61,965 nt of DNA, filler included, from Dugesia japonica (GCA_001938525.1; 6 parts of 6 records of this genome joined end to end with filler, not necessarily neighbours in it); one strand, 5' to 3'. Shown: positions 8,500 through 27,076, numbered from the whole stretch's first letter. The notes: a model not told the origin generated them from the sequence alone. A program made the numbers and translations.

Positions 8500-9312
8500 A
8501 AATACTCTCAAATGGTTCATTAGCCTTTAATTTTATAATTTCCTCCTTTGTTCTAATTGTTGTTACTTTGTTCGTTTGGCACGCTGTACATTCTTTAATT
8601 ACTTTTGACACAGTTTCACTTAACTCTTCAATATCATATTCATTTTTCAAATAATTTATGACTTTTTCCATACCGGCGTGCACCAATAATTTATGGATTT
8701 CTTTTACCATTTGAATTTTCTTTTCTGATGGGATCCATATTTTGTCGTATTTTGTTTTTATTATATCTTCTATTAATCGAAACTTTTTACATGTTCCATT
8801 TTTTATATCATTCTTTATCTGTTCAATTTCTTGTACGTTACTTTGCCATTTATATGTATCTGAACTTGATATACCATTAATTGTTCTTGTCTTTATTTTC
8901 CTTCCTTTGGATTTTCATGATCTGTTAGGCATTGTACACACGTACCACAATTCATTCTTGACAGCATATCTGCATTCGTGTGTTTCGAACCTTGTGATCT
9001 GTTCTCACCAAAAATCTTTTTCCATACAAATAATGTTTAAAATGGTTACAAAAATAGTAAATGNNNNNNNNNNNNNNNNNNNNNNNNNNNNNNNNNNNNN
9101 NNNNNNNNNNNNNAAAATCTTTTTCCATACAAATAATGTTTAAAATGGTTACAAAAATAGTAAATGGCCAATAATTCTTTTCTTGTTGTACAATATCCCT
9201 TTTTATGAGCTGACATTGCATGTGACCCATATGCAATGATTTGTTCTACACCTCTTCCATCTATTTGCGATAAAACTGCTCCAATGGCATCAAAGCTCGC
9301 ATCAAAACGCAT
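8500..9312 (-). mobile_element. Gypsy pol fragment (RNase H and integrase H2C2 finger)
   Basis: DASFDAIGAVLSQ...YCTTRKELLAIY...HYLYGKRFLVRTDH; EIHKLLVHAGMEK...CTACQ. Confidence 0.9.
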
Positions 9313-9561
9313 CCCAACGTTGCGTTCCAGCTTTTCATCCCAACGTTGCGTTCCAGCGTTTCATCCCAACGTTGCGTTCCAGCGTTTCATCCCAACGTTG
9401 CGTTCCAGCTTTTCATCCCAACGTTGCGTTCCAGCTTTTCATCCCAACGTTGCGTTCCAGCGTTTTATCCCAACGTTGCGTTCCAGCGTTTCATCCCAAT
9501 GTTGCGTTCCAGCTTTTCATCCCAACGTTGCGTTCCGGCTTTTCATCCCAACGTTGCGTTC
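9310..9561. repeat. 26-bp minisatellite CATCCCAACGTTGCGTTCCAGC(G/T)TTT, ~9.5 copies
   Basis: Seen directly; accounts for the spurious FIPTLRSS/SSQRCVPAFHPNVAF ORFs. Confidence 0.95.
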
Positions 9562-11731
9562 TAGCATTTGTGTGTAATCGTTAGAGAGATAAAAAAAAAT
9601 TTTCCAAAAACAAAAGTTTATTAAAATTATCAAAATAATTAAAAATTTATTTTCCCAGCAGAATCTGAACAAAAAATTATTGATTTAATTTTATACTAGG
9701 ATATCGATTTTTCCGTTGACCGACAGCAGTAGTAGCAGAAATAGTAACACACGAATACAATTGCCGAAATGATCATAGCAATAATTAATAAATTTATTAT
9801 CAATATTAAATAATCTTCTGAATCAAATTAAATATTAATTATTGATTACTTTTTACTTACTTAAAATTATCCAATTTATCAAAATTTCTTTGCAATCTCC
9901 TATCAAATCAAATCAAATCAAAATAATTAATAAAATCACAATATTTATCACCATCAATCACCAAACTCAAATCAACCTTCGAATCTTGATCATCGAGACC
10001 TTTCGTGTCTAATTTGATAACAAGTGATGAAAAATTAGAAAATATTTTCTCTAATTTATCTATTTCTCCTCCACAAGTGCTGGATAACTTGATAATAATT
10101 AATAAATCGATAATCTAGTTACACTTCAGCAGCAAATTAAAATTTATTAAAATTATTTCTAATTATAATTTAATCAATTATCAAAGTTTAACGAGTATTT
10201 CTATTATTCTATTCACAACTAAATAATTACTTTATTATCTTTTGTTATCCCATTTACAACAGTAATTATATTCAAATCAAAAATTTCACATTTATTATAC
10301 TCTTGAGCTTTTAACTTTATCAAATTATTATTAAATTTTACAGTTGGATTTGATAAAGTAAAGTTTAATATGCAATACAAACTTTTGTTTCCAATATTGT
10401 TAAAATTTATTTTATATCCGCATTCAGTGGTGAAATTTGTTCCATTAATACAATTATTTTTATTAATCTCTACAAGTAATTCTATAAATATTTACACAGA
10501 ACAGAAATACCTTCAAATAAATAAACCTGAATACAAGTAGAAAATATTATTAATAATTTTAACATTATAAATTAATAGAAATATTTAAAATATATCAAAA
10601 ATATTCAATATTTTAATAATTACAAATTCAACTTATAAAATATCACTTTATTCCGAAAATTTATTCATTAATTTAGTCTAACAATTACTTCATTCAATTC
10701 TTAATTTGTAGTTTTAAATTATAATTTCATTAGTTATTTTATCATTAATTAAAAACAATTCAAAATATTTCATAAAGAAATTTAATAAAAACATTTCATT
10801 TATTCTTTAATAATATAATTATTTGTTAACCTTATTTTAATCCAAATTACAATAAATAATTCAAATTTATTTGAAAAATATTTTAAGTTCTATTTTCCTA
10901 TTTTATTATAATTATTTTTTAATTAATAATTAGAATTTACTTTTTAAAAGTTATTATTTAAGAAATGGAAAATGTTAATAAATCGAATAAAGGGTTAAGT
11001 GACCATTCATTCGGATTTCGTACAACTATTTTCCTCAAACTGATATTGCAAATATCGTGATTTTCCAACTTACTATAGAATTTTTTTTATAGATAATTTA
11101 AAATCCGCTATTAAATTTAAAGATTTTATGTCCTTTTACAGTGACAAGCCAATTAAACCGGTAGATTTCTGTATAAATTGCAGGCAGCAAATAGTACTAT
11201 GATGATCGGTAACATCACTTTCCTTTAATAATAATTAAACTGCAGTTAAATTAAGGATAATTGAATTTAATTTTATCTTGTATCTTAAAGGATGATAAAA
11301 ATAAAGTTTTTAATAGCTATATTGGAACAGAACCCGGCCATGTTTATCCACTTTAGTCTTTAACAATTGAAGAGGAAAAACTATTAATAAATAAATATTA
11401 GCGGGAAAATAAATTATTATTTAATAAATCGAACTATTATTAATGTTGGGCTCCGAGGTTTTGATGTTTTATATCTTCTCTTGTAACTCTTGGTACTTCT
11501 TTCTTGACATTCCTTTTATCTCATTATCTTGTAGAGGCAGATACCCCGGAGCCGGCAGAAATTTGGCAACACTCATTGTTTTGCTCCATCCACCCCGAGT
11601 CCATGCGGGACTATGCGGTATTCCGTCTTTTAGAAAGTCTTAGTTGTTATGGTTCATATTAAGTTGAATCAATTTAATCTTTAAACAATGAAGAGACTTC
11701 GATAATAATTACGCATTTATTTTGATATAAT

Positions 11732-12056
11732 TTATGGCGACTCGAAGACTGTTTCCTCGGTAATCACACATTCATCGTAACTTTTGTTCTTCACCTCATA
11801 TTCCTTCCACAATGTCTTTACGTTGGCATAGGATTTGATTATCTCGACAAACATTCGGTTGTTCGCAATGAGTGTGAGTTCTCTCCGGTGACTCACACTC
11901 AATCGTTCTCGCAAGTTAGATATCCTTCGCTTGGTGAGGCTGGCCGTTTCTTGTAGTTTTTTGTTTTCTTTACGTAGCCTTTTTAGTTCAAAATCTGGCC
12001 ACGCGCTGATCGATCAACAACTCTTTTTGAGTGGGTTTGATGATTCTCATTGACAT
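11732..12056 (-). pseudogene. Distant paralog of cassette ORF A (one frameshift)
   Basis: ttatag|A ATG TCA ATG AGA ATC ATC AAA CCC ACT CAA AAA; KPTQK and MFVEIIKSY compare with APTKK and SFTEIIRSY of ORF A; AATAAA after the stop. Confidence 0.5.
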
Positions 12057-12155
12057 TCTATAATTTAAATAGACTAATCATTCATCATAAAATAGTTCGA
12101 TTTTATCGGTATAACAATTTTATCACATAAATTCGTAATAACTAATTAATTTTTA

Positions 12156-12503
12156 TTATAATGATAGAGTTAAATTATTGTAGATTTTATCTCTTTTTCT
12201 CTTTTCTCCTGATTCATGATTGGTTAATTGATGCTCATACTGTTGCTCTTGTTCCCTGATTTTCCCCTTTAATCGCTTTAATTTCTCGAAATGTTGACTA
12301 GTTATTTCCACCTCCAGCCTTTTGATGCGATCCTCCTTCTGATTCATTTGATCTTGTATCATCCACCAGGGCTTGGTATCGGTACCTTCTCTCCCTATGG
12401 AATCCAAAACGTCAGACATGCTGCTGTTTGAACCGATGTTGAAACTGAGTCCTGCTTCACTTAAATTGGCGATGGCTTCTGCTCTCACGAATTGATGGGT
12501 CAT
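12156..12503 (-). CDS. Orphan 115-aa coiled-coil ORF in a second acceptor-ORF array
   Basis: aacatag|ATG ACC; open frame in a GC-richer island. Confidence 0.5.
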   Translation of the reverse strand: MTHQFVRAEAIANLSEAGLSFNIGSNSSMSDVLDSIGREGTDTKPWWMIQDQMNQKEDRIKRLEVEITSQHFEKLKRLKGKIREQEQQYEHQLTNHESGEKRKRDKIYNNLTLSL

Positions 12504-13622
12504 CTATGTTCTAAGTAATAATATTATTAAGTTATTAATATGTGGCTACTGAAAAATTGTAAATCAACTCAAAGAACAGTATATATTATTAATTAAAGGA
12601 ATGTTAACCGATAAATTTTGTTTCGTTTATCCATACTACTCTTGATTAGTAGATCATCGACCACTCATCATCTTGGATGGAGATGGAAGACCTTTATGAA
12701 ATTCATTAAATACTCCTTTTCTATTTCAGACATGATTTTCCACATCACTGTACATAATATTTCATGGTGACCCTATTGTAATCAATCAAGAATTATCAGG
12801 AATCCAGCTCCCTCTGGATGATGAATGGTCCTTCTATCTCTTAGAGCATCATTATGGTAATATCACAAGGTGTATTTTCGTATCTAAACCAACAAAACCT
12901 TTATGTTTAAATACTGAAATTATAGCTAAGAAATTAATATTAATCAATTAACAGCAATCCAAATAAATGTTTATTATAAGATATGAAATTAATGAATAAT
13001 AAACACATAGTTGAAAGTTTGATATTTTTACATACACTGAACAATCGTTTATTTCAGTCTAATGGCCATATAATAAGGAGAAAGATCCAACCACCCAAAT
13101 CCAACATCAGGTTAATCACGTTTAATAGAAAAACAAGTTTTGAACGACGAGTGTCTCATTCTATCACTACAATCANNNNNNNNNNNNNNNNNNNNNNNNN
13201 NNNNNNNNNNNNNNNNNNNNNNNNNTGAACGACGAGTGTCTCATTCTATCACTACAATCAATTCGCCGTTTATTATCTAGTAATAATTGTTCGTTCTAAT
13301 CATCATAGTNNNNNNNCTCAGCTCTTTTATTGATCAAGGCAGGAAATTGTCATTTCTTCCGTGTTACTCTACGTTAATATTTATCATTTCGCGACACGTT
13401 TCTTTCTTTCTACACATTGTCAATTCGCTATAGTTCATCATTTTATCATCGTTATTTATGAGTGGAAGATCTCGCGAGGAAGGAGCTGATAAGATGGACC
13501 GCCGGAGATAGCAGAACTACCCTCAGATGATCCCTCTTCAGTGTCTTCCAAAAAATAAAAAACAATTTAAAATATGATAACATAAAAATAGAAGGAATCC
13601 TTACTTCTTTTCCCGATAGATG

Positions 13623-13811
13623 TGTTGGGGTCCCCCCTGAGTTGAGTGACAAGAAAAGGTGGCTGGGGAAAAAACAGCCCTCAGGGGAACCCTTCCAAGA
13701 ATTTACCCTACCGTCCTTGTGGTAGGTTTTCAGTTTATGTTGGTTGACCTTACTCTTAATGGAAGGTACACGCCGATAAACCTTTATATTCGGGTTCAAT
13801 AATTTTTCCCT
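13623..13811 (-). ncRNA. Novel structured RNA motif, copy 2
   Basis: Same stems with compensatory substitutions, including 13-bp GGGUUCCCCUGAG/CUCAGGGGGACCC. Confidence 0.7.
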
Positions 13812-13876
13812 TCTTGTTATCGTTAAAATACAGAAATCACACTTTTGAATACAGACATTTTATTTTATGGAAATAT

Positions 13877-14259
13877 TTAGAGCAAATCCAGCGCCCCTGG
13901 ATCTAACCACTGGTTTGGTTTTGTTACCATGAAATTGAAAGCTACGATGTCGTCATCGTCATCCCATTGTGTTACCGATGGGTTGCTTATTCGACGGGAC
14001 AGGTCAGCAATATATTGCTTTAAGAACTCGATTTTCCGCATCAACAGCTGTTTGGTTTCGGTTTCCAAAGCTTTGGTTTGAACCGCCAGATCATTTTGCT
14101 TTTTTATAATTAAATCTAATTTTTTAATCAGTTGATCCCGTTGTTCTAAATGTTTCATAAGCGCCTTATCCGTCTTATGTTTTAGGTGACGTTCGACCAG
14201 TAAGCGGCGCATAATTCTATGGCACCTCCGGATACTATTGGGAAAGTTAATTCGTGGCA
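13877..14259 (-). CDS. Cassette ORF B, copy 2 (intact)
   Basis: cattcag|TG CCA CGA ATT; ends QWDDDDD...QWLDPGALDLL; AATAAA at ~13860. Confidence 0.8.
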
Positions 14260-14380
14260 CTGAATGAAAAACCATTAACAGAGAAATAATAACAGTTATT
14301 ATAATCAAGTTTATTATGTATTCAATGGTGTAAAAGAACTGAAGCTAAGATTAAGATATACAAAATTTTATTTTTTAAAG

Positions 14381-14748
14381 TTAAACATGGGGAGTGGATT
14401 TCGTCTTGGTGCCCTTATCAATCATCAAAGGCTCCAGATATGATTTAGTTTTGAGAAGTAGGATGTCTTTGACCAGTTTATTCTCACGGTCATGGCTGGA
14501 CCGGATAATTTCGGCGAACGACTCTACCTGGGACTTCCACACTCTCTCTTGGTCCTGCACCATTTTTATTTCTTCGCGGATATTCGTACATTTGGTTTTA
14601 TATCGCTTTACCTTAGAGTGGGCCGTAGCGATTTCTGCTTCCCATCGCCTCTTGGCTAGTTTGTATAGGTCCCAAGTAATCTCCTTATCTTCACTATCTT
14701 CGCGTAATTTTTTAGTCGGGGCCTGCGATCGATTCAAAGATGAGTGCA
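14381..14748 (-). CDS. Cassette ORF A, copy 2 (intact)
   Basis: atttcag|TG CAC TCA; synonymous changes relative to the other copies; AATAAA at ~14367. Confidence 0.8.
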
Positions 14749-14901
14749 CTGAAATATAAATGTAGTAAAATTTAAGAATTCTAATTAAAATGAGGTGTAA
14801 TTCGAAAACAAGACCAAACAGGGTGGATCAATAAATATTCTACACTAAGGAAACAGAGAAAAAACAAGTTTTTATTCAAATTTTATTAGACAGTAGTGAG
14901 T

Positions 14902-15330
14902 TTACACGAGCACATCAGTGTGATCTTCTGTTGCATTCTCGTTGTTATCGTTGATTAACGCGTTCCGCGCACTCCACAGATTATTTTGTATAAAAGAAGA
15001 CAGTTGTGCCGTAGGGGGTAAGAGGTTCGTGGTGGGTCCCACTAATGAAGAACCATCGTGCCATACACGTTCTATTTGCGGAGTTTCGGTGGACCGCTCA
15101 AAGGACAATGGTGCTGGTGGAAAGGTGACTCTATCTCTTCTCGGTCCACACCAACTATAATAGGCAGCCCGTTCGGTCGCGTCCCACTGTCTTTCCTCAG
15201 CGGCCTGCTCGGGTGACAAATTAGAGTGCTCCACCAGAACACCGGCATTCCTATTGTATGGATTCCGATATCTTTTAAAGGTCGTTCGGCCGGAATGGAC
15301 GTTTAGACACACTTCCCATTTGTATTCCAT
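14902..15330 (-). CDS. Cassette ORF C, copy 2 (intact, 142 aa)
   Basis: ttgtag|AGATTCAT ATG; homologs in copies 1 and 3; two AATAAA at ~14870-14887. Confidence 0.8.
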   Translation of the reverse strand: MEYKWEVCLNVHSGRTTFKRYRNPYNRNAGVLVEHSNLSPEQAAEERQWDATERAAYYSWCGPRRDRVTFPPAPLSFERSTETPQIERVWHDGSSLVGPTTNLLPPTAQLSSFIQNNLWSARNALINDNNENATEDHTDVLV

Positions 15331-15529
15331 ATGAATCTCTACAATTAATAGGGAGTAATGGTATAATTTGAAATAGTGAGAATGGGTTAGATAACTAGTT
15401 CATATTAGAGGAAATTAATTTATAATTACAATGAGACAAAAAGTTTATTTTACAGCAATTTTACACAAATGACACGACAGGAAAACAATCTTTTAAGTGG
15501 ATATCACCCGCACGAATTAGAACATCTGG

Positions 15530-15697
15530 TTATTCCTCGTCTATATCAACTCTGGTTGGAAAGGGGAACATCTCGACGAAACACTGGAGGTCTGTTTCGT
15601 CGGGGTGTTCCACCTCACCCCTCGTTAAATAGTGGGCAATGACAGATTCGTCGTTGGCAACACCACCTCGCGCAATTCTAATGTATGGTTTGATTTT
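15530..15697 (-). CDS. Cassette ORF D, copy 2 (55 codons, LxCxE-like acidic motif; not in the ORF track)
   Basis: tttgtag|AAA ATC...GEVEHPDETDLQCFVEMFPFPTRVDIDEE*; C-terminal half conserved in copy 3. Confidence 0.6.
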   Translation of the reverse strand, partial: KIKPYIRIARGGVANDESVIAHYLTRGEVEHPDETDLQCFVEMFPFPTRVDIDEE

Positions 15698-18600
15698 CTA
15701 CAAAAAAAAATTTNNNNNNNNNNNNNNNAAATTTATTTTATACTGTGTGGATTTTAACGAATTTGTCATTTAATTATCATATTTCGTGATCGTCTCCTTA
15801 CCGGCGTGACTAGAGTTGTTTAAAAGGTAAAGCAATCGAGATAGTTTAACAGTTATTTCGTTTGTGTATAATCTAGCTAGATAGATACAATTACGGCAAT
15901 GATTTTCTGCAGAATTAGTGGATTTATCGATTTCCTAACCAAGAGAAGAAACTGAGCTAATTGTTGCCTCAAGCACTGATGTCGATCATGGGTCTCGATC
16001 AAAATACAATCTATTAATCATGTTACTGAAGAGGAATTTTTTAATCAATAGTGTAAGTTTGCTAAGTAAACTACCTTGGTTCTCCGGTAAATAAAAAATA
16101 GAAGTAGAATTTCGTTAATTTATCACTTTCTATTAACAATTAAAAATGATGGATATTTATCAAATTAGTTTACCCTCGTAATTCTTGGTACAATAACTCG
16201 TAATGTTATATTTTGTTATATTATTTTTTTTTATTAACAATGAAAAGGATGGATATAAAATTTGTTTATCATAGAAATTCTTGGTAAATTCAATCATAAA
16301 GTTATATTCCGTTATTTTATCAATTACTTATCTAAACGATGAATATTTATAAAATAACAACTATAATGGTTCATCATAGAAAATTAAAATAAATCATAAA
16401 GTATTATTTTGTTATTTTAACGATTTTGAGTAATTAACAAATGAATATTTATAAAATAACAACTGCATTTAGCTTAACATAGAAATTTTATTAAAGTAAA
16501 TGTTATTTCACTTTTCACAACATGACTATTTAATATAATCAAGATAATATTTTTACTTTTTCTTTTGGCTTATAGGTTGTTTGCAACGGGCTTCTTTTCG
16601 AGAACAATCACTACTAATCTTGCAATTCCTTGGGTCGATTCTAAAGTCCGGAATTCTTTTACTTTCTTGTATTACGATTTTCTGTTATCGTACACTTCTG
16701 TTGCCGCACGATGACTTTTGACTGATTTGCACTTGTATGTTAAGCTTTTTTCGACTATCCGTTGTTTTACACAGTTCACTGTCAATTTATTACCGTAAAT
16801 TCCTTTTGAATAATTAAGTGTTTGAAAGCTAACGTTTGGTTTTTCCAAGAGAAAATAATGATAATTAGTTGTTTTTTTCAGCTAAAGTTAGGGATCCTTT
16901 TATAGGATTTGTCATACACCCCGACTTCTTCTTGATTTGCTGATTATTTTTGGATCAGCCTTTTCTTGATCTTACTGGTTACTGAACCAATTTTCCAAAA
17001 TTTTCTAAAAATTTTGGTGCTGCTATTGGCAGCTATTTTTATCANGACACATGACATTTGTGTCTTTGTTATATTTTTATTTTTAGGTCTTCTATTGGCT
17101 GGATCTTGGAAACCTTGCCGTACCCTTCTGGAAGGTGGTATGTTTTCCTTCTTCAGAATTTTAATTGCACATGGATGTTTTCTCTTCATTTTTTCTTGTC
17201 CGGGTTTTTTCCGACTTCCGGATAAAACAGATTTTTTCACTAATTTCGCTTCTTTTTATTTTAAAATTAATTAATTTTCTTTTGCTAATTAATTATTTAC
17301 AATACTGCTTTTCTTTGTTGTTTATTATTAATTAATTAATTTTTCTTAATTTCCAAATGTAAATTGCTTCTATGTTAACCTGTTCTTCAGCTTCGTCTAA
17401 GCCTTTCGTTCGTTCTCTGCTAAGGATGATTACATGTTTTATATTTCATTATTGATAATTACAGCGGTTCTGCTATTCTTTGCCGTCGATTTGACTTTTG
17501 GCCTTATTCTCGTTTAGCGAGTGTTTTACCCCAACAGATGTTCTGATTTAATTAAACAGTTAATGGTGTTTAATGGAAATTTTTAAGAGTGTTTTTCTAA
17601 TAATTTTGATTTCCTTTTATACCTCACTGTATCGTCAAATTTTAACAGATACAGTTGGCGTCCACTTCAGATTTCTGTTAATGCAAGAAATCGTACTCTG
17701 TTTACCCGTAGCTTCTACAGAGATGTCCAAATATGGGCGTGATTATTTTTATGTTTTTGTTAATTCTGTAGCGGATTATGTGCTCACAGAAGTTCTATAT
17801 TTTTTTCCTCAATTGGAGAAGCTTAAAAAAATAATATTTTTCTTAAAAAATAATAATTTTCTTAAAAAATAATAATTTTCTAAAACTTGTATGAGTTTTA
17901 GAAATAAAAATAACTACACAATCACATGCAGATATAAACATATCAACCCTGAATTCTAACATAAAATCATCAGAGGTTCTTCTGCATATAACTTTTCTTT
18001 TATAATTCCTTCTTATTCATTATAAATAATAATATTTATTGAATAATAATAATTTTAATTATATTTATCGATAATAATAATAATTTCCCATTTTTATATT
18101 TTTTTAAAAATTTATAATAAAAATACAGTTCTTGTACTTAAACCTGACTAATAATCTATTATTTTTTTATTTAAAATGATTATGATGATTTATTCTGCTT
18201 TTCTTTTCCTATAATTACTCTTTAAAATATCTAAATATTTTAATATAGTTATTTGTTTTAATTTCTCCTTTTTTCTAATCATTATAACTTTATTTTTAAT
18301 ACATGAATTCTTTCAGCACATTTATATAAATTATAAATAATATTATTTTCTTGGTTTTATTTTACATTCTCCTTTTTGATTATTTAAATACTTTCTGAGC
18401 ATATTTTACCTTAGCCATCTAATTTTTGATTATCTTCAATTATTATGTTTTAATATTTAATCAATTCTTCGTTTTCTCTACAACATATTACTTATTTATT
18501 ATTACCCTTTAATTTATTTCCTTCTCTGCTTTTCATATTTTACGAAAGGCTGTTTCAGCCCAACATTAATATAATAGATAAAATTATCAAAAAAGGTTCA

Positions 18601-20456
18601 TTAATTATTCTGTGTAAAGAAAAAATTTTATATTATCAATTCGTATTCGTAAAATAATAAAAGATGTTAATCAGAAGAAGAAATAATTTCACTGAAAAGT
18701 TAAACAAAATATGATAAAATAAATCGATTATCCCACCAAAATCCACCAACCATTGATTGATTAATACCAAAAAAGGGTATAAACGGAACTGCGACTTTGT
18801 GCAATACTACCCGTAAAAGAAAAATTAAGATACAAGTAAGAAATTTCAATGTTTCTCTATAGAAAACTCGGCTTGAATATTTACATTAATATTACATTAT
18901 TTTTTATAGTCTTATTACATTAAACGTCTTCTTAGCAAATCAGTTGCAGATGCTATTAAATTTTACCCAGTTGTTAATAAATCTATTTAATGGGGATATA
19001 TAAGGACTTTAACTTGAAATTTTATTCATAGAGCTAGAACTAATACACTTCCTAATAACTTTTATGATTTAAAAAATATCATATTTTATGATTATTTTAT
19101 GATTTTAAAAATATACAGACTACCTTCTTTGGTTATTTTATAATAAAAATATACAAAGATTCCCTTCTTCGGTTATTTTTATAAGTATTTAATAAGTATA
19201 ATTACAATATGGTTGCAACATAGTTGCAACAATCTACTCAAACCACTCAAATATAACAATAATCTAAAAATAATCCCTGCCACATAGAGTAAATAATCAA
19301 ACAATGCACCATAACTATGCAAATATTACACTGTTACCATGTAATAAATGAATTTTTTAAGTTTATATCACTTTTATATTAATTTCATATTACCATAATT
19401 ATCATAATTACAATTATGATAATATGAAATTAAACAATCAATAAATATTGGTTAATTATAATTGATTAATTTCATATTACCTTAATTTTAATTGTATTAA
19501 TATGAAATGAAAATTTTAATTTCAAATAAATTTATGGTAATGAAATTAAGCAATCAATAAATATTTAGATTTTTTAATTTATAAAACTATAATTATATTT
19601 GAAATTAAAAATGGTGATTTTATTTGTTTGATTTTTTTAAGTTAAATTTTAATGAAACTTTTTAATTAGATTTTAATGAAACTTTTTTANTTAGATTTTT
19701 TTATAAGAGAATTTAATTAACTATTAATTGAAATTTAGGTAAATCTATTTAAAGGTATCATTATTATATGGTCTATGATGATGAAGGGTTCCATAATAAT
19801 ATGGTCTACGAGGATTAAAGGTTCTTTTAATATGGTAAAAAATGTGACAAAGATATATAATATGTGCTAAATAATATAAATATATCATGTTTTGAATAAG
19901 TAACAGTTGCGAGGGAATTCCTGATAATTTTTCGGATCTGGAAGCACTGATACCAGAGATGCACATACCTTAATCGAGCTTAGCCTAGTTAAAACTACAC
20001 AAGCTGATCGATAAGTTCAATTATGAACAGACTCGAATTGGATACAATCAGACTTTGATGGATTCGCTCCGTTAGACTGTACATGTCGGATGAGGTAATG
20101 GTATGGAATGAAAACAAGACTGTTAGAGAAACAATACATGAAAATAATTATTAATGATTTATTTATTTAAATTAATTAACTTATATAAGAAAAAGAACAA
20201 GAAAAATTCTTTTAAATTTCTCGCCAAAAAAACATAAAAGACAGAGGAAAGAAAAAAAATTTTTCTCCAAAAAAATTTTTAAAAAATAAAGAAAATAAAA
20301 TTTTTTTTTAAATTTCCCACCAAAAATTTGTACGATAACTAGTAACTCAGATGAATACTAGTAACTCACACGATAATAAGCAGCTTGCAACAAATTTAGG
20401 AATTTACACGGTTGGTGTGAGCACACTGAACCATTATGATGTATCGATAACCCTAT

Positions 20457-20608
20457 CCCCTCTTGCGATAATACCAAAGTGAGTTACTATTTTAGATCAA
20501 TAAATTTGCAATAATCAGTAACATATATTAACCTATTTTCTATTTCCGCGCGATAACCAGTAAATGACTTCAAAATAGTAACTCATTTTGGTATTATCGA
20601 GAAAGGGG
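20457..20608. mobile_element. MITE-like element with ~37-bp TIRs
   Basis: CCCCTCTTGCGATAATACCAAAGTGAGTTACTATTTT ... AAAATAGTAACTCATTTTGGTATTATCGAGAAAGGGG. Confidence 0.75.
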
Positions 20609-21070
20609 CTCAATAACTCATAGTGAGCCAGTGCGCTTACATCTACCTACTAAAATATTAACCCAACATATAAAAGTTACATAAATCACACGAAAATTAT
20701 AATCTAACGTATAAAAAATCGAAACCAACTTATTAAAATTATAATTACAATTATTGCGAGAATAATTGTTGGACTTAACCATTGATTGCATTTGAGATTT
20801 TAGTAAAATAAAGAAAAAGGTTTGATAAAAATAAAATGTATTTGTAACGAAATTCAAATTTTCGACACTTGCCTTCTTCAGGAATGATGACTTTTTGCTA
20901 GATTCAAAACGATAATAGATCTTTGTTACAAAATTCTTTATATTTTATCTAAATTTTTTTTTAAAATTAAATCTCAAAAAATCTTTTTTAAATTAAATTG
21001 AATAGAAAATCGTTCAATAATCGCGAATAGACGTATTTTCTTGTCTGCAATTAAGTACATTAATTATAAT

Positions 21071-21260
21071 TGTTGGGGTTCCACCTGAGTCGAGGTTGAC
21101 AGAAAACACTGACCTGGGAAAAACGGCCCTCAGGGGATCCTCTTCAAGAATTTGAATCTAATGTCCCTAAATTAGATATTCAGTGCAGAGCGGTTGACCT
21201 TCAACTTCATGCGAGGTTCACACTCCTACACCTTTGGTTTGGGTCCATATTCATTTCCCT
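21071..21260 (-). ncRNA. Novel structured RNA motif, copy 3 (most diverged)
   Basis: Stem sequences rewritten but still pairing (GGUGUAG/CUGCACU; AUCUAAU/AUUAGAU). Confidence 0.7.
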
Positions 21261-21319
21261 ATTATTTTAATCATTATATAAAAAACAAAATTCTAATAAT
21301 AATATGTATTATTTTCAAA

Positions 21320-21678
21320 TCACATTTCATCCAGAGTACCCGGGTCTAACCACTGGGTAGGCTCTTCTGGTAAAAAATTAAACACAGCTGTGTCGTCGTT
21401 ATCGTCCCATTGTAAACATCACACGTTACCTAATTAACGAGGCAGGTCGGAGATATAATGCTTTAAAAAATCTATTTTATTTTGCAGGAGTTGTTTGGTT
21501 TGCATTGCCAGGTCATTCTGCTTTTTCACAATAACATCCATCTTTTTGATCAACTTATTGCGCTGGGATAAATGTTTTAGTAGGGCCCTCTCACTGTCTT
21601 TTGACATGTTTTTCTACCAGCATGTTTGTATCAGATGGTGACATCGCTTAAGACTTGTAGGGAGTCGGATCCTATGCA
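21320..21678 (-). pseudogene. Cassette ORF B, copy 3 (disrupted)
   Basis: tgtttag|TG CAT AGG ATC; ends QWLDPGTLDEM*; internal frameshifts and stops. Confidence 0.75.
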
Positions 21679-21825
21679 CTAAACAAATAAGAAATAAGAA
21701 TAGAATTTAATTTTTAAAAACAAATTTAATTAAGAGGGGACTCTATCAACATCACCAGTATGAACGTAAACGAATTATTTAGACAGCCACATTTATTTAA
21801 AAACTAAACACAACATTACAAAGGG

Positions 21826-22184
21826 TTAAGTCCGCGATGTCTGAATGCCCTTGTCCATCATAAGGGGTTCAAGCGGCATCGCTGTTTTTAACTTTAAAAT
21901 ATCGATGATCAGTTTATTCTCTCGGTCTTTGTAGGACCGGATGATTTCGGTGAAAGATTTTATCTGGGCCTTCCATACTCTTTCCTGGGTATGGGAGGCT
22001 TCGGCCTCTTTCTTAAATTCTACGCATTTTTTCTTATACCGACTTACTTTACTATTGGCATTTGCCGTGTCGGCCTCCCATCTGCGTTTGGCTAGCCGAT
22101 AGAGGTCCCAGGTCATTTCCTGGTCCTCGCTGGTCTCCCTTACCTTTTTGGTCGGAGCTGGAAGTCTATTTAGCGATGAATGCA
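21826..22184 (-). CDS. Cassette ORF A, copy 3 (intact)
   Basis: tctatag|TG CAT TCA; ~119 aa homolog. Confidence 0.8.
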
Positions 22185-22352
22185 CTATAGAATGAGTAAA
22201 TAAATTAGACTAGCTACATATTTAATGTAATAGATTTAAATCAGAATTCAAATTGTGAAAAATCATCAATGGACAAGCAACATGACAAGTCATCCTAGGC
22301 TTAAAGTAATAAAGACATTTATTAAAAAATATTTAACAAATAACAAAGGGCG

Positions 22353-22772
22353 CTAGTCGCTCGGAGTGGTGTTTGTGTTTTCATCATTATCGTTCTCGGC
22401 CGAATTCCTTATAGTCCATAAATTGTTATGGACAAAGGCAGTTAAATTGTGTAATGGGCGTAGATGGTTAGTAGTGACACCTACAACCGAAGACCATTCG
22501 TGCCATTTTCGAATAATTTAGGGCACGCCATCTCAATTTATGGTTACAACTGGAACCGCATGATAAACGGCCCTTGTATGATCAGGACCGTTCCGCGTGA
22601 AATATGAGTGGCGCTCATTTGCGTCCCACTTGCGTTCGTCGTTTGCGTCTTCAATGGGTAAATTGGCTCTGTCGACAAGAATACTGGCATCTCTATCGTA
22701 GGGATTTTTATACCGTTTGAACAAGGTTCCACCCGAGGTGCGGTCTAACAAAATCTCCCATTTGTGCTCCAT
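22353..22772 (-). pseudogene. Cassette ORF C, copy 3 (disrupted near 22530)
   Basis: attag|G ATG GAG CAC; downstream WHEWSSVVGVTTNHL...FVHNNLWTIRN matches WHDGSSLVGPTTNLL...FIQNNLWSARN of copy 2. Confidence 0.75.
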
Positions 22773-22929
22773 CCTAATATTATTTTTTCGACATTTATTA
22801 AAACCATTTAAATATATTAAAATATGATGGAAAAAAATGATAATAAAGTGATTTCAGAAAGAGGATTAAAATGTTTCTCAATTTTATTTAAACCAGGCCA
22901 TAACAGTTGTCAGTATTATGTTTGCCGTG

Positions 22930-23118
22930 CTACCATTCTTCGTCAAGGTCCACATGGAATTGCTGTGAGAACATTTCGACGAAACACTAGAGATCAGTCT
23001 CATCGGGATGTTCGATCTTACCATGGGACAATATGTAAGCTAAAAATTGCCTCAACCGAGAGGTCTTATGTCGTTTTCAAATTAAGCGTAACGCATTTCT
23101 TAGTTCCGTGGACATAAC
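22930..23118 (-). pseudogene. Cassette ORF D, copy 3 (two in-frame stops)
   Basis: atttcag|GTT ATG TCC...GKIEHPDETDL*CFVEMFSQQFHVDLDEEW*. Confidence 0.65.
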
Positions 23119-24473
23119 CTGAAATTAATATGTACATTAGATCATCACACCACTGCCACCCCTAAGTGCAATATCAGCCAAAAAGAGGCCCAGATTTATG
23201 ATGTCTGGTTCTGGCATCAATAATAAAATTTTAGAGGTCGTCACCCATGATTACTAACCTGCTGATGGAAATAATAATCACTTATTCTGGACTAGTCGTG
23301 ACTTTACGAAAGACGCTTCACAATTCTAATACTCCAATTAAAGGTTCTAACCGAAGGGCATTTTTAGCCTTAACTCTGTCATTGGTGCAGTTCATATCCA
23401 TAACTGGATGGATCATAATAAAAAGAGAAAGCCAACAAATCATGGTGAAAGTGATAATAATATAATAACAGTAAGGCCATCCACTAGTTTAATATTTAAA
23501 TAATAACGTTAATGATGCTAACGGACGACCTCTAAACCATCTAGTTGCTGAAGGTGGTCACGACTATAACAATTGTATATGGATAAGCCTGGTAATAGTG
23601 TTGTTAGTAATAACAACAACCCTTTTAATATACACCATAGTTGTAATGATATTCCGAACGATATTGATGATAATAATTATTATGTCAATACGAAAATTAC
23701 TAACGGTCACAATGCTGACAAAAATTACCATTTTAATAATGAGAACAAGAATTTTAATAATGATAAAAATCATGAAAATAATAATACTAAAGGTGAGAAT
23801 TATGAATCCATTTAACACATGCAAATAAATCATTTTATCATGGTACATACGACAGCAAAATTACTAACGATGGCCAATTTCCTACAAATTATATAAGTCA
23901 CTTCTGAATTATCATAAATGAGCAAAATTACTAATTATTAATAAATGACGGAGATAGAATATGTTAGTTCTAGTGATGTGCTAACTTTAGCCGTGGTGTA
24001 TACGAGACACACACATTCGTAGTCAATATTAGTAATTATGATAGAGAGCTTACATACCATAATTGGATCACTATATATTAGGTAGAACAAGAAATGACAA
24101 AGTTAGTGTGCATTCCGCTATCAACCAGATTCAACGTTAGCATAATTGAAAAAGTGAAAACTGCTTATGAAAGAACTACTGAAAAGTTGCACGGCGAAGC
24201 CAATTCTCGAATCTAAACCAATACGATTTTGGAATTAGTAAATATGGAAATCACAATTATTCATCAGGTGGAATGTTCGAATGGCTCGCTGGATAAGTGA
24301 CATTACACTGCTACATTCAAGAAATAAAAGATAACAGATCTCACACTGGAATTATCGCGAGGACAATCCTGCCAGCGGCTTAATTTGTTAGTTACGAGTT
24401 TAATAAAATTTTCCATCGCTGTTTATGTCCTACCAATTTCTATTAAAATAGCAAATAAAGTAACTCATAGTAT

Positions 24474-24657
24474 TGTTGGGGTTCCACCTGAGTAGGAGGA
24501 AGAAGAATGTGGCTGGGGAAAAACAGCCCTCAGGGGAACCTTTCAAGAATTTAACCTAACGTCCCTAGGTTAGATATTCAGCTTATGGTGGTTGACCTCT
24601 CGCTTAATGAGAGGTGCGCACCCATAGGCCTTTTGATTTGGGTTCACTATTTTCCCT
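24474..24657 (-). ncRNA. Novel structured RNA motif, copy 4
   Basis: Closest to copy 1; ACCUCUC/GAGAGGU, AUCUAAC/GUUAGGU, GGCUG/CAGCC. Confidence 0.7.
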
Positions 24658-24721
24658 ATTATCACGAATTTATTAAAGGTGAAAAGGAGTTGAACAAGAA
24701 AAACTTTATTTCATAAGAAAA

Positions 24722-25104
24722 CTAGAGGAGATCTAATGCCCCAGGGTCTAGCCACTGGCTTGGATCCGTCGTTGAAAAGTTAAAGGCGGCTATATCATCA
24801 TCATCGTTCCACTGTAACCAAGAGAGATTACCAATCTGGCGAGAAAGATCTTCGATATACTGTTTCAGGAAGTCGATTTTCCCTTGCAATAACAGTTGGG
24901 CTTGATTCTCTAAAGCCTTAGTTCGAGTGGCTAAATCGTTTTGCTTTTTTACTATCAAATCTAGTTTTTTTATCATTTGGTCCCTTTGCGCCAGGTGTTT
25001 TAATAACGCTCGGTCGGTTTTACGTTTTAACTGTCTTTCGATGAGTAGGCGACGCATTATCCGGTGACACCATCGTAAGCTGTTCGGAAATGTGATCCGT
25101 GGCA
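24722..25104 (-). CDS. Cassette ORF B, copy 4 (intact)
   Basis: catctag|TG CCA CGG ATC; 127 aa; AATAAA at ~24705. Confidence 0.8.
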
Positions 25105-25235
25105 CTAGATGAAGAAGTATTAATGAAAAGAAATTATTAATTTATTTTATATAGAACGAAACTCCCCTAATCAAATCAAAATAAGACACACAAAGGTAAG
25201 GATTTACGAACTAATCATTTATTTGCAAATATAGT

Positions 25236-25606
25236 CTAGTCATTTGATATAGNNNNNNNNNNNNNNNNNNNNNNNNNNNNNNNNNNNNNNNNNNNNNNNN
25301 NNNNNNNNNNNNNNNNNNNNNNNNNNNNNNNNNNNNNNNNNNNNNNNNNNNNNNNNTGGCTGGACCGGATGATCTCGGCAAAAGATTCAACTTGTTTCTT
25401 CCACACCCGTTCTTGCATGTGGGAGGCTTCGGCTTCTTTTCTAAACACGATACATTTTTTTTTGTATCGGAGTATTTTTGCGGTGGCCACCTCCGCCTCC
25501 CAACGACGCTTCGCGAGGCGGTATAGGTCCCAAGTCATCTCTTGGTCCTCGCTGGTGCTTCTCATCTTTTTAGTGGGAGCCGATGGACGGTTCAGGGAGG
25601 AATGCA
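25236..25606 (-). CDS. Cassette ORF A, copy 4 (3' part in gap)
   Basis: tttatag|TG CAT TCC; HSSLNRPSAPTKKMR...WDLYRLAKRRWE. Confidence 0.7.
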
Positions 25607-27076
25607 CTATAAAATTGTAAATATTTGCTAAAGTATTGTTATTACATTTATTGAAGCACACAACACTTAAAAATACACTCTTATATTAATATATCTAGAA
25701 ATTTTCTTTTTATGTATGAACAAAACTAGGTGCGATTATCATTAAAAAGAGACACTTATTTATTTACGATNNNNNNNNNNNNNNNNNNNNNNNNNNNNNN
25801 NNNNNNNNNNNNNNTTAATTAATTAANNNNNNNNNNNNNNNNNNNNNNNNNNNNNNNNNNNNNNNNNNNNTAGAACTGTTTATTAAAATCCTTGAAATAC
25901 ATTATCCAACACTCAAAGATGCCATCAAATACTGTGCACCTGAAGTCATTTTGATAAAAATAAAGGATATAACTGGAGTGGATATCAATGATGTCATNNN
26001 NNNNNNNNNNNNNNNNNNNNNNNNNNNNNNNNNNNNNNNNNNNNNNNNNNNNNNTATTTTAAAAAGAAAATTTATTGATATAATTTATGGTTTTAGTCAT
26101 AAATAAAGACAATAATTGTATTTTAATTAAATTTTATGTTGTATTGATGTTAAATAAAAATTTTAATTTGACTTGACTTTGAATTGAAACATTGACTTTA
26201 ATTTAAAATATTTGTTTTCTTTACATAATGTGTTACAAAAAAATTTCAAAAAAAAAATTTGTAAATAAAAAATTTTTTTAAAAAAAATATTTTAAACAAA
26301 AAAAAATAAATAAAAATTTAAAAAACAAAATTTATAAAAAAAAATTTCAAAAATTTATTTTCTAACCTCCCCTCCCCCTGGGGGGTTGATCTAGAAATTT
26401 TTTTCTTTGTTTGTTTGGACATAGAAATTTTTTTAGTTACTGGAATAGTTACAGGAATTCCAATTATATATTCAATTGCTCATGGATCTTTGAGAGTTGA
26501 ATGAAGTTAAATGCATGTTGAACAAATGGCGCAGCAAAAAGCTAAGTTTATGGCGGAGCTCGAGACAATGAAGTTGCAATAAACNNTGAAGGAGAGCCTT
26601 ATACACATGATGGAGATAGAGAGGAATAAAATGCATGACGTTTATGAGACGATGATGAAAGGAACGTTAGTAGAGTGTAAAAGGCGCAATTTGGCAAAGA
26701 CCCCCAAACCATAAAATTTAATTTTTTTTAAGAAAAAGTTCGGGGTTGAAAAAATTGCGTTTTTTGCCGTCAAAAGATGAACAAAAGACTAAAAACTAGT
26801 AAAAATGAGCAAAAAATCAAAAAGTGAAAAATCATGATTTTATACCTGAAATTTTCTAGGGGGGAAATTGAAACTTGCAAATTTTTTTTTATAAAAATCA
26901 GTTTTGAGCTTGAAGCAAAAAAAATAAGAAAAAAAGAGTTGGCTGAAAATTAGTTAAATTTTTTTTTTTTTAATGTTAATGAGTTCTTGGTCTAATCATA
27001 CTTTTTACACTCTACTTGCGAGTTGAAATGTCGCTTGTTGTTTATTTTTTGTCGTTTATCGTTTGTAGTTTATCGT

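What the first reader, a model, noticed from the sequence alone, without database searches (positions are those of the whole stretch)
13623..15810. Repeated operon-like or adenovirus-like cassette: [acceptor-ORF-AATAAA] x4 followed by the structured RNA
SEEN: order D-C-A-B-RNA is complete in copies 2 (13623-15697) and 3 (21071-23118). Copy 1 retains C-A-B-RNA and is cut by a hAT fragment; copy 4 retains A-B-RNA up to a linker. The ORFs are GC-richer than the flanks, have no internal introns, and are generally followed by AATAAA. The next acceptor lies ~100-155 bp further on (15445 to 15340, 14875 to 14750, 14367 to 14260, 21792 to 21680). Spacers diverge while the proteins are conserved. I recognise none of the proteins; A and B look coiled-coil and B ends in a conserved QWLDPGALDL. 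KNOWLEDGE: this layout resembles SL2-type nematode operons (~100 bp from 3' end to trans-splice site) and adenovirus units that use alternative acceptors and poly(A) sites from one leader. INFERENCE: an undescribed multi-gene module of a virus or mobile element, or a lineage-specific operon.
Basis: partly seen in the sequence, partly recalled or inferred. Interest (0 to 1): 0.85.

Follow-up and report, generated by a model that had tools for sequence, protein, structure and literature searches.

The report
Repeated four-gene cassette ending in structured RNA
A small block of four short orphan protein genes plus a conserved folded RNA is repeated side by side in an AT-rich eukaryotic genome. 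Its layout suggests one transcript cut into several leader-spliced messages, and nothing marks it as a virus or a jumping element.

Summary
The layout is real and lies on the minus strand. Three homologous cassettes exist: copy 2 at 13623-15697, copy 3 at 21071-23118, and copy 4 from 24474 to the piece edge. The order is D-C-A-B-RNA.

- **Coding:** A, B, C and D are coding. Synonymous sites are saturated (pS 0.84-1.03) and pN is 0.14-0.37.
- **ORF starts:** Every ORF starts at a polypyrimidine-AG site. A and B lack an ATG and begin AG|TGC in 6 of 6 cases. The G of that junction codon never varies, although 20 of 24 neighbouring third positions do. An upstream exon or leader ending in A probably completes the AUG.
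- **ORF ends:** AATAAA follows the stop within 30 nt in 5 of 6 intact ORFs, against a background of 0.096.
- **RNA:** The 178-nt RNA has 47 pairs, 9 with compensatory changes, and no Rfam match.
- **Copy 3:** It is decaying, with 7 in-frame stops in D, C and B and no frameshift.
- **Origin:** There are no hallmark viral or transposon genes and no terminal repeats. One 94-aa metagenomic protein is the only relative found.

Best reading: a lineage-restricted, tandemly duplicated unit that is operon-like or spliced from a shared leader. The leader was not found, and no transcripts or structure models were available.

The parts
15530..15697 (-). D, copy 2: 55 codons plus stop. It begins directly after ttttgtAG and has no in-frame ATG.
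   Evidence: Coding signature against copy 3 over 36 codons: pS 0.84 and pN 0.25 in this frame, against 0.44/0.33 and 0.25/0.41 in the other two frames.
15565..15611 (-). GC-rich hairpin inside D (19-nt arms, 9-nt loop). It starts 9 nt after a conserved donor-like GGTRAG.
   Evidence: I8, 89% complementary.: -32.2 kcal/mol and z -3.96 in copy 2, but only z -1.76 in copy 3. The Rfam mir-7640 match (22.9 bits against a threshold of 90, E 0.48) is taken as chance.
14902..15338 (-). C, copy 2: acceptor-like AG at 15339-15340, own ATG at 15330, 142 codons, stop, AATAAA at +15.
   Evidence: The N-terminal 74 residues are 57% identical to metagenomic protein P0001.
14381..14748 (-). A, copy 2: begins tttcAG|TGC with no ATG of its own. 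About 121 codons, heptad-periodic, AATAAA at +9.
   Evidence: pN 0.22-0.25 against saturated pS when compared with copies 3 and 4.
13877..14259 (-). B, copy 2: begins ttcAG|TGC with no ATG of its own at the start. 126 codons ending QWLDPGALDLL, AATAAA at +13.
   Evidence: pN 0.157 against saturated pS when compared with copy 4.
13623..13809 (-). Structured RNA, copy 2. The core is 13623-13800, it is preceded by AG|GGAAA, and conservation ends at ...CCCCAACA.
   Evidence: (193.3 bits). No Rfam family.
22930..23118 (-). D, copy 3: broken by 2 in-frame stops and no frameshift. It has an in-frame ATG 4 nt after the acceptor-like AG.
22353..22773 (-). C, copy 3: broken by 2 in-frame stops and no frameshift. 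Its own ATG lies 2 nt after the acceptor-like AG.
21826..22184 (-). A, copy 3: intact. It begins ctatAG|TGC, with AATAAA at +29.
21319..21678 (-). B, copy 3: broken by 3 in-frame stops and 8 gap columns, with no frameshift. It begins gtttAG|TGC.
21071..21258 (-). Structured RNA, copy 3.
   Evidence: (184 bits).
25236..25606 (-). A, copy 4: begins ttatAG|TGC. Its middle and end are partly hidden by the N mask at 25253-25356.
24722..25104 (-). B, copy 4: intact. It begins atctAG|TGC, with AATAAA at +12.
24474..24655 (-). Structured RNA, copy 4.
   Evidence: (197.1 bits).
15714..15728 (.). Assembly gap (N). It lies outside every conserved unit, just 5' of D's T-run and AG.
11450..12503 (-). It is a doubtful, much more diverged or unrelated block with a similar look: two GC-richer ORFs, AATAAA signals, and a GC-richer tail ending ...CCCAACA.
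   Evidence: read by eye. One search gives only E 0.006 over 39 residues. It is not found.

Best explanation
Each cassette is a compact multi-product transcription unit on the minus strand of an AT-rich eukaryotic genome. It was duplicated in tandem long ago.

Shown from the sequence:
- Four short protein-coding units (D, C, A, B) are under purifying selection.
- Each begins at a polypyrimidine-AG site and ends with a stop plus AATAAA.
- A fifth unit is a folded RNA of about 180 nt, also preceded by AG.

Inferred:
- One primary transcript is resolved into separate messages.
- A short leader is joined to each AG, either by cis-splicing from an upstream exon or by trans-splicing.
- The RNA is cleaved and polyadenylated after each ORF, as in SL-type operons or in a late-adenovirus-type unit.
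- For A and B the leader's last base, an A, completes the start codon (A|UG). C, and D in copy 3, use an ATG of their own 2-9 nt after the AG.
- The proteins are basic/acidic, without signal peptides, and A is heptad-periodic. I guess that they act with the locus's own RNA as a small nuclear ribonucleoprotein. That last step is conjecture.
- The family is a host, or long-domesticated, lineage-restricted one. It is not an active virus or transposon.
For: - **Three cassettes in one order and orientation**.
- **Coding signal:** pS is 0.85-1.03 (saturated) against pN 0.14-0.37 for 5 of 5 pairs of A, B and C. D gives pS 0.84 and pN 0.25 in its own frame only.
- **ORF starts:** 6 of 6 A and B units start YAG|TGC. 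The preceding 20 nt are 0.55-0.85 pyrimidine against 0.47 background. For A, identity jumps at the AG from 0.29-0.36 upstream to 0.64-0.69 downstream.
- **Junction codon:** the G of xTG is invariant in 6 of 6. Third positions of the next 12 codons vary at 11 of 12 (A) and 9 of 12 (B). This fits a non-degenerate ATG better than GTG, CTG or TTG.
- **Own start codons:** C2, C3 and D3 have their first ATG 2-9 nt after the AG.
- **Poly(A) signals:** AATAAA lies within 30 nt of the stop in 5 of 6 intact ORFs against 0.096 background. My binomial arithmetic gives about 5e-5.
- **Spacing:** AATAAA-to-next-AG distances of 105-133 nt at 5 junctions lie in the 50-200 bp range, with a median of 129 bp, quoted for C. 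elegans operons in passages of PMC7668243.
- **RNA:** 92.9% of cells are paired. 9 pairs changed on both sides, against 0-1 in six slid controls and 0 of 500 shuffles. G-U pairs fit the minus strand.
- **Against a mobile or viral origin:** no terminal repeats and no hallmark domains.
Against: - No leader exon ending in A was found. Candidate A|GT sites upstream of copies 2 and 3 share nothing, and no conserved upstream coding block exists.
- D of copy 2, the best-kept copy, has no ATG and is not rescued by a leader ending in A. The rule therefore holds for 9 of 10 units.
- From memory, known spliced leaders end in G, or in AUG in flatworms (passages of PMC9851317). None ends in a lone A.
- The invariance of TG could reflect splice-site context rather than a start codon.
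- The host is unknown, so whether it trans-splices is unknown.
- There are no transcript data.
- AATAAA is not rare in this AT-rich DNA.
- The RNA lies beyond B's AATAAA, so its link to the messages is unclear.
- The ribonucleoprotein idea has no direct support.
Confidence: 0.45

Rival explanations
1. One gene per cassette with a coding first exon and alternative last exons. The 5' part of D (26 codons) ends at a donor G|GTRAG in phase 1. It is spliced in frame to C, A or B, or is left unspliced, which gives D. The isoforms then share a short N-terminus and differ in the rest.
For: - A donor-like GGTGAG/GGTAAG sits at the same codon in 2 of 2 copies that have D.
- Its phase (1) equals the phase of the A and B acceptors in 6 of 6 cases and of C in copy 2 (read).
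- A strong hairpin starts 9 nt after it in copy 2.
- B is conserved right up to its stop, so these exons are terminal, not internal.
Against: - The junction codon would be GTG (Val), yet its third base never varies although 20 of 24 neighbouring third positions do.
- D of copy 2 has no ATG, which would silence every isoform of the best-preserved copy.
- The shared 26 residues are poorly conserved: only residues 20-55 of D align.
- C of copy 3 is in another phase.
- C has an invariant Met start in 3 of 3 sequences, including P0001.
Confidence: 0.2
2. The cassette is a module of an endogenous virus or of a mobile element. It would be non-autonomous, moved or copied by machinery encoded elsewhere, with the 3' structured RNA as the recognition element.
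For: - Sharp, identical 3' ends (...CCCCAACA) in 3 of 3 copies.
- The proteins are orphans: 1 true relative among 1.84 billion cluster representatives for C, and none for A or B in the word-indexed search.
- The design is compact, with several products per transcript.
- An LTR-retrotransposon fragment lies nearby.
Against: - No polymerase, capsid, integrase or transposase domain.
- No LTR, TIR or visible target duplication.
- No poly(A) or microsatellite tail after the 3' end.
- Nothing in IMG/VR.
- The copies are tandem, co-oriented and saturated at synonymous sites, which looks like an old local gene duplication.
Confidence: 0.12
3. These are independent small genes, each with its own promoter. 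The AG sites and T-rich tracts before the ORFs would be what AT-rich spacers give by chance, and A and B would start at internal or non-AUG codons.
For: - The spacers are 21-30% GC, so T-runs and AATAAA are common.
- A TATAAAA lies about 45 nt plus the gap upstream of D in copy 2.
- B has a conserved internal Met at residue 16 in 2 of 2 intact copies.
Against: - Coding-type conservation starts at the first base after the AG in A and B.
- A has no conserved Met at all.
- The spacers of 119-191 nt leave little room for promoters.
- The exact AG|TGC in 6 of 6 is unlikely by chance.
Confidence: 0.1
4. The 3' RNA is an independent small RNA gene, of Sm class and like an SL RNA or snRNA, or an H/ACA-like RNA. 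It would merely be linked to the protein genes.
For: - The architecture is two 5' stem-loops, a single-stranded AAAUUCUUGR, then a long 3' stem-loop and a short tail.
- An ACA ends the conserved region in 3 of 3 copies.
- The 5' single strand contains ACCC[AG]AA...AAAG|G. From memory, this is loosely like nematode spliced leaders.
Against: - No Rfam family at E up to 1 on the piece or up to 10 on single copies, and no consistent hit between copies.
- The Sm-like site carries a C inside the U-run.
- There is no conserved GU donor: copy 4 has GC at the best site, and no A|GU is shared (read).
- An H box (ANANNA) is present in 1 of 3 hinges only, read by eye.
- The internal U6 run argues against Pol III.
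- The three copies differ by about 20-35%, unlike homogenised SL RNA arrays.
Confidence: 0.08

Closest known systems
Nematode SL2-type operons (C. elegans, Trichinella). I read passages of PMC7668243.
   Same: - Co-oriented genes.
- About 100-130 nt from each AATAAA to the next UUUCAG-like acceptor.
- The start codon lies at or within a few nt of the acceptor.
   Different: - A and B have no AUG of their own.
- The host is unknown.
- No SL, SL RNA gene or Ur element was shown.
- The last unit is a non-coding structured RNA.
- The whole 'operon' is tandemly duplicated as a unit.
Flatworm spliced leader that donates its 3'-terminal AUG. I read passages of PMC9851317, which cites Cheng et al. 2006 (not read).
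   Same: The leader supplies start-codon information to ORFs that lack their own AUG.
   Different: - Here only one base (A) would be donated, because the exon keeps UG.
- A leader ending in a full AUG would put A and B out of frame. It would fit only D of copy 2, read.
Adenovirus major late transcription unit (recalled, not fetched or compared).
   Same: One leader, several alternative acceptors, and several poly(A) sites on one primary transcript.
   Different: - No leader or promoter was identified.
- There is no viral hallmark gene.
- The unit is 2 kb, not tens of kb.
- No sequence similarity was tested, because fetching such a virus is barred.
Arrays of alternative 3' exons on a common 5' part: Drosophila mod(mdg4) and lola (recalled).
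   Same: Many terminal exons, each with its own acceptor, stop and poly(A) signal, lie in one orientation and are partly duplicated.
   Different: - There the common part encodes a large BTB domain and the variable exons encode zinc fingers.
- Here no common coding exon was found, and the variable units are unrelated orphan proteins.
Structured 3'-terminal RNA modules of long transcripts, such as the tRNA-like and triple-helix ends of MALAT1-type RNAs (recalled).
   Same: A conserved, compact fold at the 3' end of a Pol II unit, with no canonical poly(A) signal after it.
   Different: - No tRNA-like fold: ARAGORN finds none.
- No Rfam ENE, mascRNA or other match.
- The function is untested.

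Membership tests
SL-type operon (nematode SL2 model) | Co-oriented genes with about 50-200 nt between the upstream 3'-end signal and the next trans-splice acceptor | tested here: met
   The distances from the first AATAAA to the next AG are 105, 133 and 107 nt in copy 2, and 133 and 113 nt in copy 3. Three other junctions are shorter or masked. The reference range comes from passages of PMC7668243.
SL-type operon (nematode SL2 model) | A spliced leader is actually trans-spliced to the downstream acceptors | not testable with these tools
   There are no transcript data and the host taxon is unknown. No SL RNA family was found in the piece.
SL-type operon (nematode SL2 model) | Each cistron carries its own AUG | tested here: not met
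   A and B lack an ATG at their conserved starts in 6 of 6 cases. D of copy 2 lacks one too.
Leader plus alternative acceptors and poly(A) sites (adenovirus-late type, or alternative last exons) | Several acceptor-ORF-stop-poly(A) units in series | tested here: met
Leader plus alternative acceptors and poly(A) sites (adenovirus-late type, or alternative last exons) | A common upstream donor or leader exon | tested here: inconclusive
   A GGTRAG in D is conserved in 2 of 2 copies and matches in phase, but it predicts GTG at the junction. No conserved exon ending in A was found upstream. The gap at 15714-15728 hides part of that region.
Virus or provirus | Hallmark genes (polymerase, capsid, packaging enzyme and the like) | tested here: not met
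   - Pfam: nothing above the cut-offs for D, C, A and B.
- PHROGs: one weak hit of unknown function, E 0.0026.
- PDB sequences: none below E 0.21.
- IMG/VR: none.
- Fold comparison was not possible.
Transposable element | Terminal repeats, a target-site duplication, or a poly(A) or microsatellite tail | tested here: not met
   No direct or inverted repeats flank copies 2 and 3. The 3' flanks are unrelated and have no tail.
Transposable element | Dispersed copies and insertion polymorphism | not testable with these tools
   Only 17 kb of the genome is in hand. Within it the copies are tandem and co-oriented.
Known RNA families (Rfam 15) | A match at or near a family's gathering score | tested here: not met
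   The best match on the piece is mir-7640, at 22.9 bits against 90, on the D hairpin. Single RNA copies give at most 17.7 bits, with different families in each copy.
Sm-class SL RNA or snRNA | A canonical Sm site (RAU3-6GR, recalled) between stem-loops, plus a conserved GU donor for an SL RNA | tested here: inconclusive
   AAAUUCUUGR is invariant in 3 of 3 copies but is interrupted by a C. The best donor position is GU in 2 of 3 copies and GC in 1 (read).
H/ACA RNA | An ACA near the 3' end and an H box (ANANNA, recalled) in the hinge | tested here: not met
   ACA ends the conserved region in 3 of 3 copies. An ANANNA is present in the hinge of only 1 of 3, read by eye.

The most novel reading that the evidence does not exclude
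The cassette is a self-contained unit that encodes a ribonucleoprotein. Three or four small orphan proteins and their dedicated 180-nt structured RNA would be expressed together from one transcript by leader splicing, with start codons split across the splice junction (A|UG). This would be an undescribed selfish or domesticated genetic element, kept for a very long time as a tandem family.
Probability: 0.15. Interest if true: 0.8.

Novelty: new variant of a known kind. Interest (0 to 1): 0.6.

Why it matters
- **Compact expression design.** If the model holds, a eukaryotic nuclear locus packs five products into 2 kb using serial acceptors and poly(A) signals. Two of its start codons would exist only after splicing, which gene finders and ORF-based annotation miss. 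That would explain why these conserved proteins are absent from protein databases.
- **New RNA family.** The 3' RNA is a new structured family with covariation support. Its strict linkage to three or four orphan proteins gives a concrete hypothesis, a protein-RNA complex, that ordinary descriptive experiments can test.
- **Host biology.** It would also tell whether the unknown host uses leader splicing or operons.

Tried and rejected
**Homology**
- B gave no hit in the word-indexed protein search, and neither did an alignment of A.
- C was searched against 1.84 billion representatives and gave 2 hits. One is a true relative (P0001, 94 aa, from a 512-nt ENA contig, unnamed). The other is a spurious repeat protein of a bacterial MAG.
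- IMG/VR with alignments of C, B and A: 74, 275 and 47 pattern matches, none confirmed.
- JGI metagenomes with C: 58 pattern matches, none confirmed.
- GTDB genomes with C: 57 pattern matches, none confirmed.
- A 27-nt degenerate pattern from the RNA gave 0 matches in metagenomes, IMG/VR and GTDB genomes.
- PDB sequence profiles gave nothing below E 0.21.
- Pfam gave only sub-threshold coiled-coil families. PHROGs gave one weak family of unknown function.
- A full-text search for four peptides found 0 papers. That library lacks most subscription journals.

**Host taxon**
- The retrotransposon integrase piece found no protein, so the host stays unknown.

**Rejected ideas**
- The mir-7640 match is chance.
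- No tRNA-like element.
- An alternative genetic code could explain the stops of copy 3, but all three stop codons occur among them, and the same codons end the conserved ORFs of the intact copies. This was read.
- A telomerase-template reading of the CCCCAAC tail does not hold, because the tail is terminal and the 5' C-rich stretch varies.
- The RNA as a protein exon does not hold, because no frame is open in all three copies.
- LTR or TIR boundaries are absent.
- No conserved upstream exon, and no shared leader candidate.

**Papers**
- PMC9851317 and PMC7668243: passages only, by find.
- PMC3273482 and the other rows: search listing and start of the abstract only.
- Adenovirus late unit, mod(mdg4)/lola, MALAT1-type ends, Sm and H/ACA consensus motifs, and known spliced-leader 3' ends: recalled, from no call.
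- I did not ask for supplementary tables. Those of PMC7668243 may list leader sequences that bear on the 'leader ending in A' point.

Full report
**What is there**

Only 8500-25770 is genome. It is AT-rich: 14-30% GC in the spacers. Everything relevant lies on the minus strand.

blastn and tblastn with copy 2 as the query find two further copies:
- Copy 3 at 21071-23118 has D, C, A, B and the RNA.
- Copy 4 has the RNA, B and A at 24474-25606. The piece then ends before any C, and an N mask (25253-25356) hides part of A.

The RNA covariance model does not find it either (3.0 bits, E 7.4). Only a 39-residue pairwise match to A exists (E 0.006). It has a similar look, but I do not count it as a copy.

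**The assembly gap**

- N at 15714-15728 lies 13 nt upstream (minus strand) of an in-frame stop that closes the D frame.
- No frame is open across the gap into a conserved unit.
- No conclusion depends on continuity there, except the unsuccessful search for a promoter or leader upstream of D.
- I did not try to fill it.

**The ORFs are real genes**

- For A (3 pairs), B (copies 2 and 4) and C (copy 2 against the first intact part of copy 3), synonymous differences are saturated (pS 0.85-1.03). Non-synonymous differences are 0.14-0.37.
- D, which I first suspected to be only an RNA hairpin, has pS 0.84 and pN 0.25 over 36 aligned codons in its own frame. The other two frames give 0.44/0.33 and 0.25/0.41.
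- The duplications are therefore old, and the proteins have been kept by selection.
- ORFs are 42-51% GC, while spacers inside the cassette are 21-30%.
- Copy 3 is decaying. C has 2 in-frame stops. B has 3 in-frame stops and 8 gap columns. D has 2 in-frame stops. No gene needs a frameshift to align. A and the RNA of copy 3 are intact.
- Seven stops and no frameshift is an odd ratio that I cannot explain beyond AT-biased mutation.

**Signals at the ORF edges**

- All six A and B units begin exactly YAG|TGC after a pyrimidine-rich tract (0.55-0.85 against 0.47 background).
- For A, ungapped identity between copies rises from 0.29-0.36 before the AG to 0.64-0.69 after it.
- A has no conserved Met anywhere. 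B has none before residue 16. Both are nevertheless conserved in a coding manner from the first base after the AG.
- C has its own invariant Met (3 of 3 sequences including P0001), 2-9 nt after an AG.
- D of copy 3 has an in-frame ATG 4 nt after its AG. D of copy 2 has none.
- AATAAA starts within 30 nt of the stop in 5 of 6 intact ORFs, against a background of 0.096.
- From that signal to the next AG is 105-133 nt at five junctions.
- The RNA unit is also preceded by AG|GGAAA in 3 of 3 copies.
- B is conserved up to its stop, and no conserved GT lies before the stops of A or C. These are terminal coding units, not internal exons of one long gene.

**How the starts of A and B may be made**

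The codon that spans the AG junction is xTG. Its G is invariant in 6 of 6 cases. Third positions of the following 12 codons vary at 11 of 12 sites in A and 9 of 12 in B. Of the four possible codons only ATG is non-degenerate. An upstream exon or leader ending in A is therefore the simplest reading.

With such a leader the first AUG of each message is the right one in 9 of 10 units. The exception is D of copy 2.

The rival is a donor-like GGTRAG inside D, conserved in both copies. It is in phase 1, like the A, B and C2 acceptors. That would give in-frame fusions, but it has four weaknesses:
- It predicts GTG at the junction.
- It depends on a D start that copy 2 lacks.
- It uses a poorly conserved common peptide.
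- It fails for C of copy 3.

I found no leader. No conserved peptide or block exists upstream of D in copies 2 and 3. The A|GT candidates there share nothing.

**The hairpin in D**

The arms are 19 nt long and the hairpin gives -32.2 kcal/mol with z -3.96 in copy 2. It is weaker in copy 3 (z -1.76). It lies in coding sequence just after the donor-like site, and its role is open.

**The RNA**

- The three copies align over 178-190 nt. RNAalifold predicts 47 pairs in five helices.
- 92.9% of cells pair. 9 pairs changed on both sides, against 0-1 in the six slid controls. 0 of 500 shuffles reach the observed covariation. With three sequences this is suggestive, not proof.
- G-U pairs fit the minus strand.
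- Conservation ends at ...CCCCAACA in all three copies.
- Rfam gives nothing, and ARAGORN finds no tRNA-like gene.
- An invariant single-stranded AAAUUCUUGR between stem-loops looks Sm-like but carries a C.
- A possible pairing of the 5' GGGAAAA with the UUUUCCC loop is invariant, so it cannot be tested by covariation.

**Origin**

- No Pfam domain passes its cut-off.
- No PDB relative and no meaningful PHROG.
- No terminal repeats.
- No relatives in IMG/VR, JGI metagenomes or GTDB genomes.
- C has one true relative, an unnamed 94-aa protein from a 512-nt ENA contig that is 57% identical. A and B have none. The length window of that search means fusions could have been missed.
- A crude heptad test supports a coiled coil in A, not in B.
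- Tandem, co-oriented, anciently diverged copies fit a host gene family better than a virus or transposon.

**Verdict**

The viral or mobile origin is unsupported. The proteins and the RNA are new families, and the architecture is a new variant of operon-like or leader-spliced units. Transcript data would settle it.

Noticed in passing
window 8501-9360 (-): A fragment of an LTR-retrotransposon pol gene. Pfam finds RNase H (E 4e-19) and the integrase H2C2 zinc finger (E 1e-10). It is interrupted by an N mask at 9064-9113 and cut by the piece edge. It found no protein in the length-limited search.
   Followed up: partly
window 9310-9569: A tandem repeat of a 26-nt unit, 10 copies with 94% matches. 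It abuts the pol fragment and produces long spurious ORFs on the plus strand.
   Followed up: no
window 16127-16320: Two copies of a 96-nt tandem repeat (77% matches) lie about 430 nt upstream of D of copy 2 on the minus strand.
   Followed up: no
window 21071-23118 (copy 3): Copy 3 decays only by stops. There are 7 in-frame stops in D, C and B and no frameshift, while A and the RNA stay intact. This ratio is unusual for a pseudogene and is not explained.
   Followed up: partly
window 15732-15742 (-): TATAAAATAAA lies directly 5' of the assembly gap, about 45 nt plus the gap before the first base of D. It could be a TATA box for the cassette or a poly(A) signal of something upstream.
   Followed up: no
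window 13803-13810 with 13669-13676 (-), and the same in copies 3 and 4: GGGAAAA just before the RNA core is complementary to the UUUUCCC loop of the last hairpin in all three copies. It is a possible pseudoknot, but it is invariant and so gives no covariation test.
   Followed up: partly
P0001 (ENA metagenome contig of 512 nt): The only outside relative of C is closer to copy 2 (57%, 54% in the alignment) than copy 3 is (48%). The family therefore exists in at least one other sampled genome or locus.
   Followed up: partly
window 11450-12503 (-): This block looks like the cassettes. It has two GC-richer ORFs, each after an AG and followed by AATAAA, then a GC-richer tail ending CCCAACA. Its similarity is not significant, and the A-like ORF seems out of frame with the ATG after its AG.
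   Followed up: partly
window 14394-14759 (+), 25369-25620 (+), 22824-23117 (+): Long ORFs lie antisense to A and D. The substitution pattern supports the minus-strand frames, so these are taken as by-products.
   Followed up: partly
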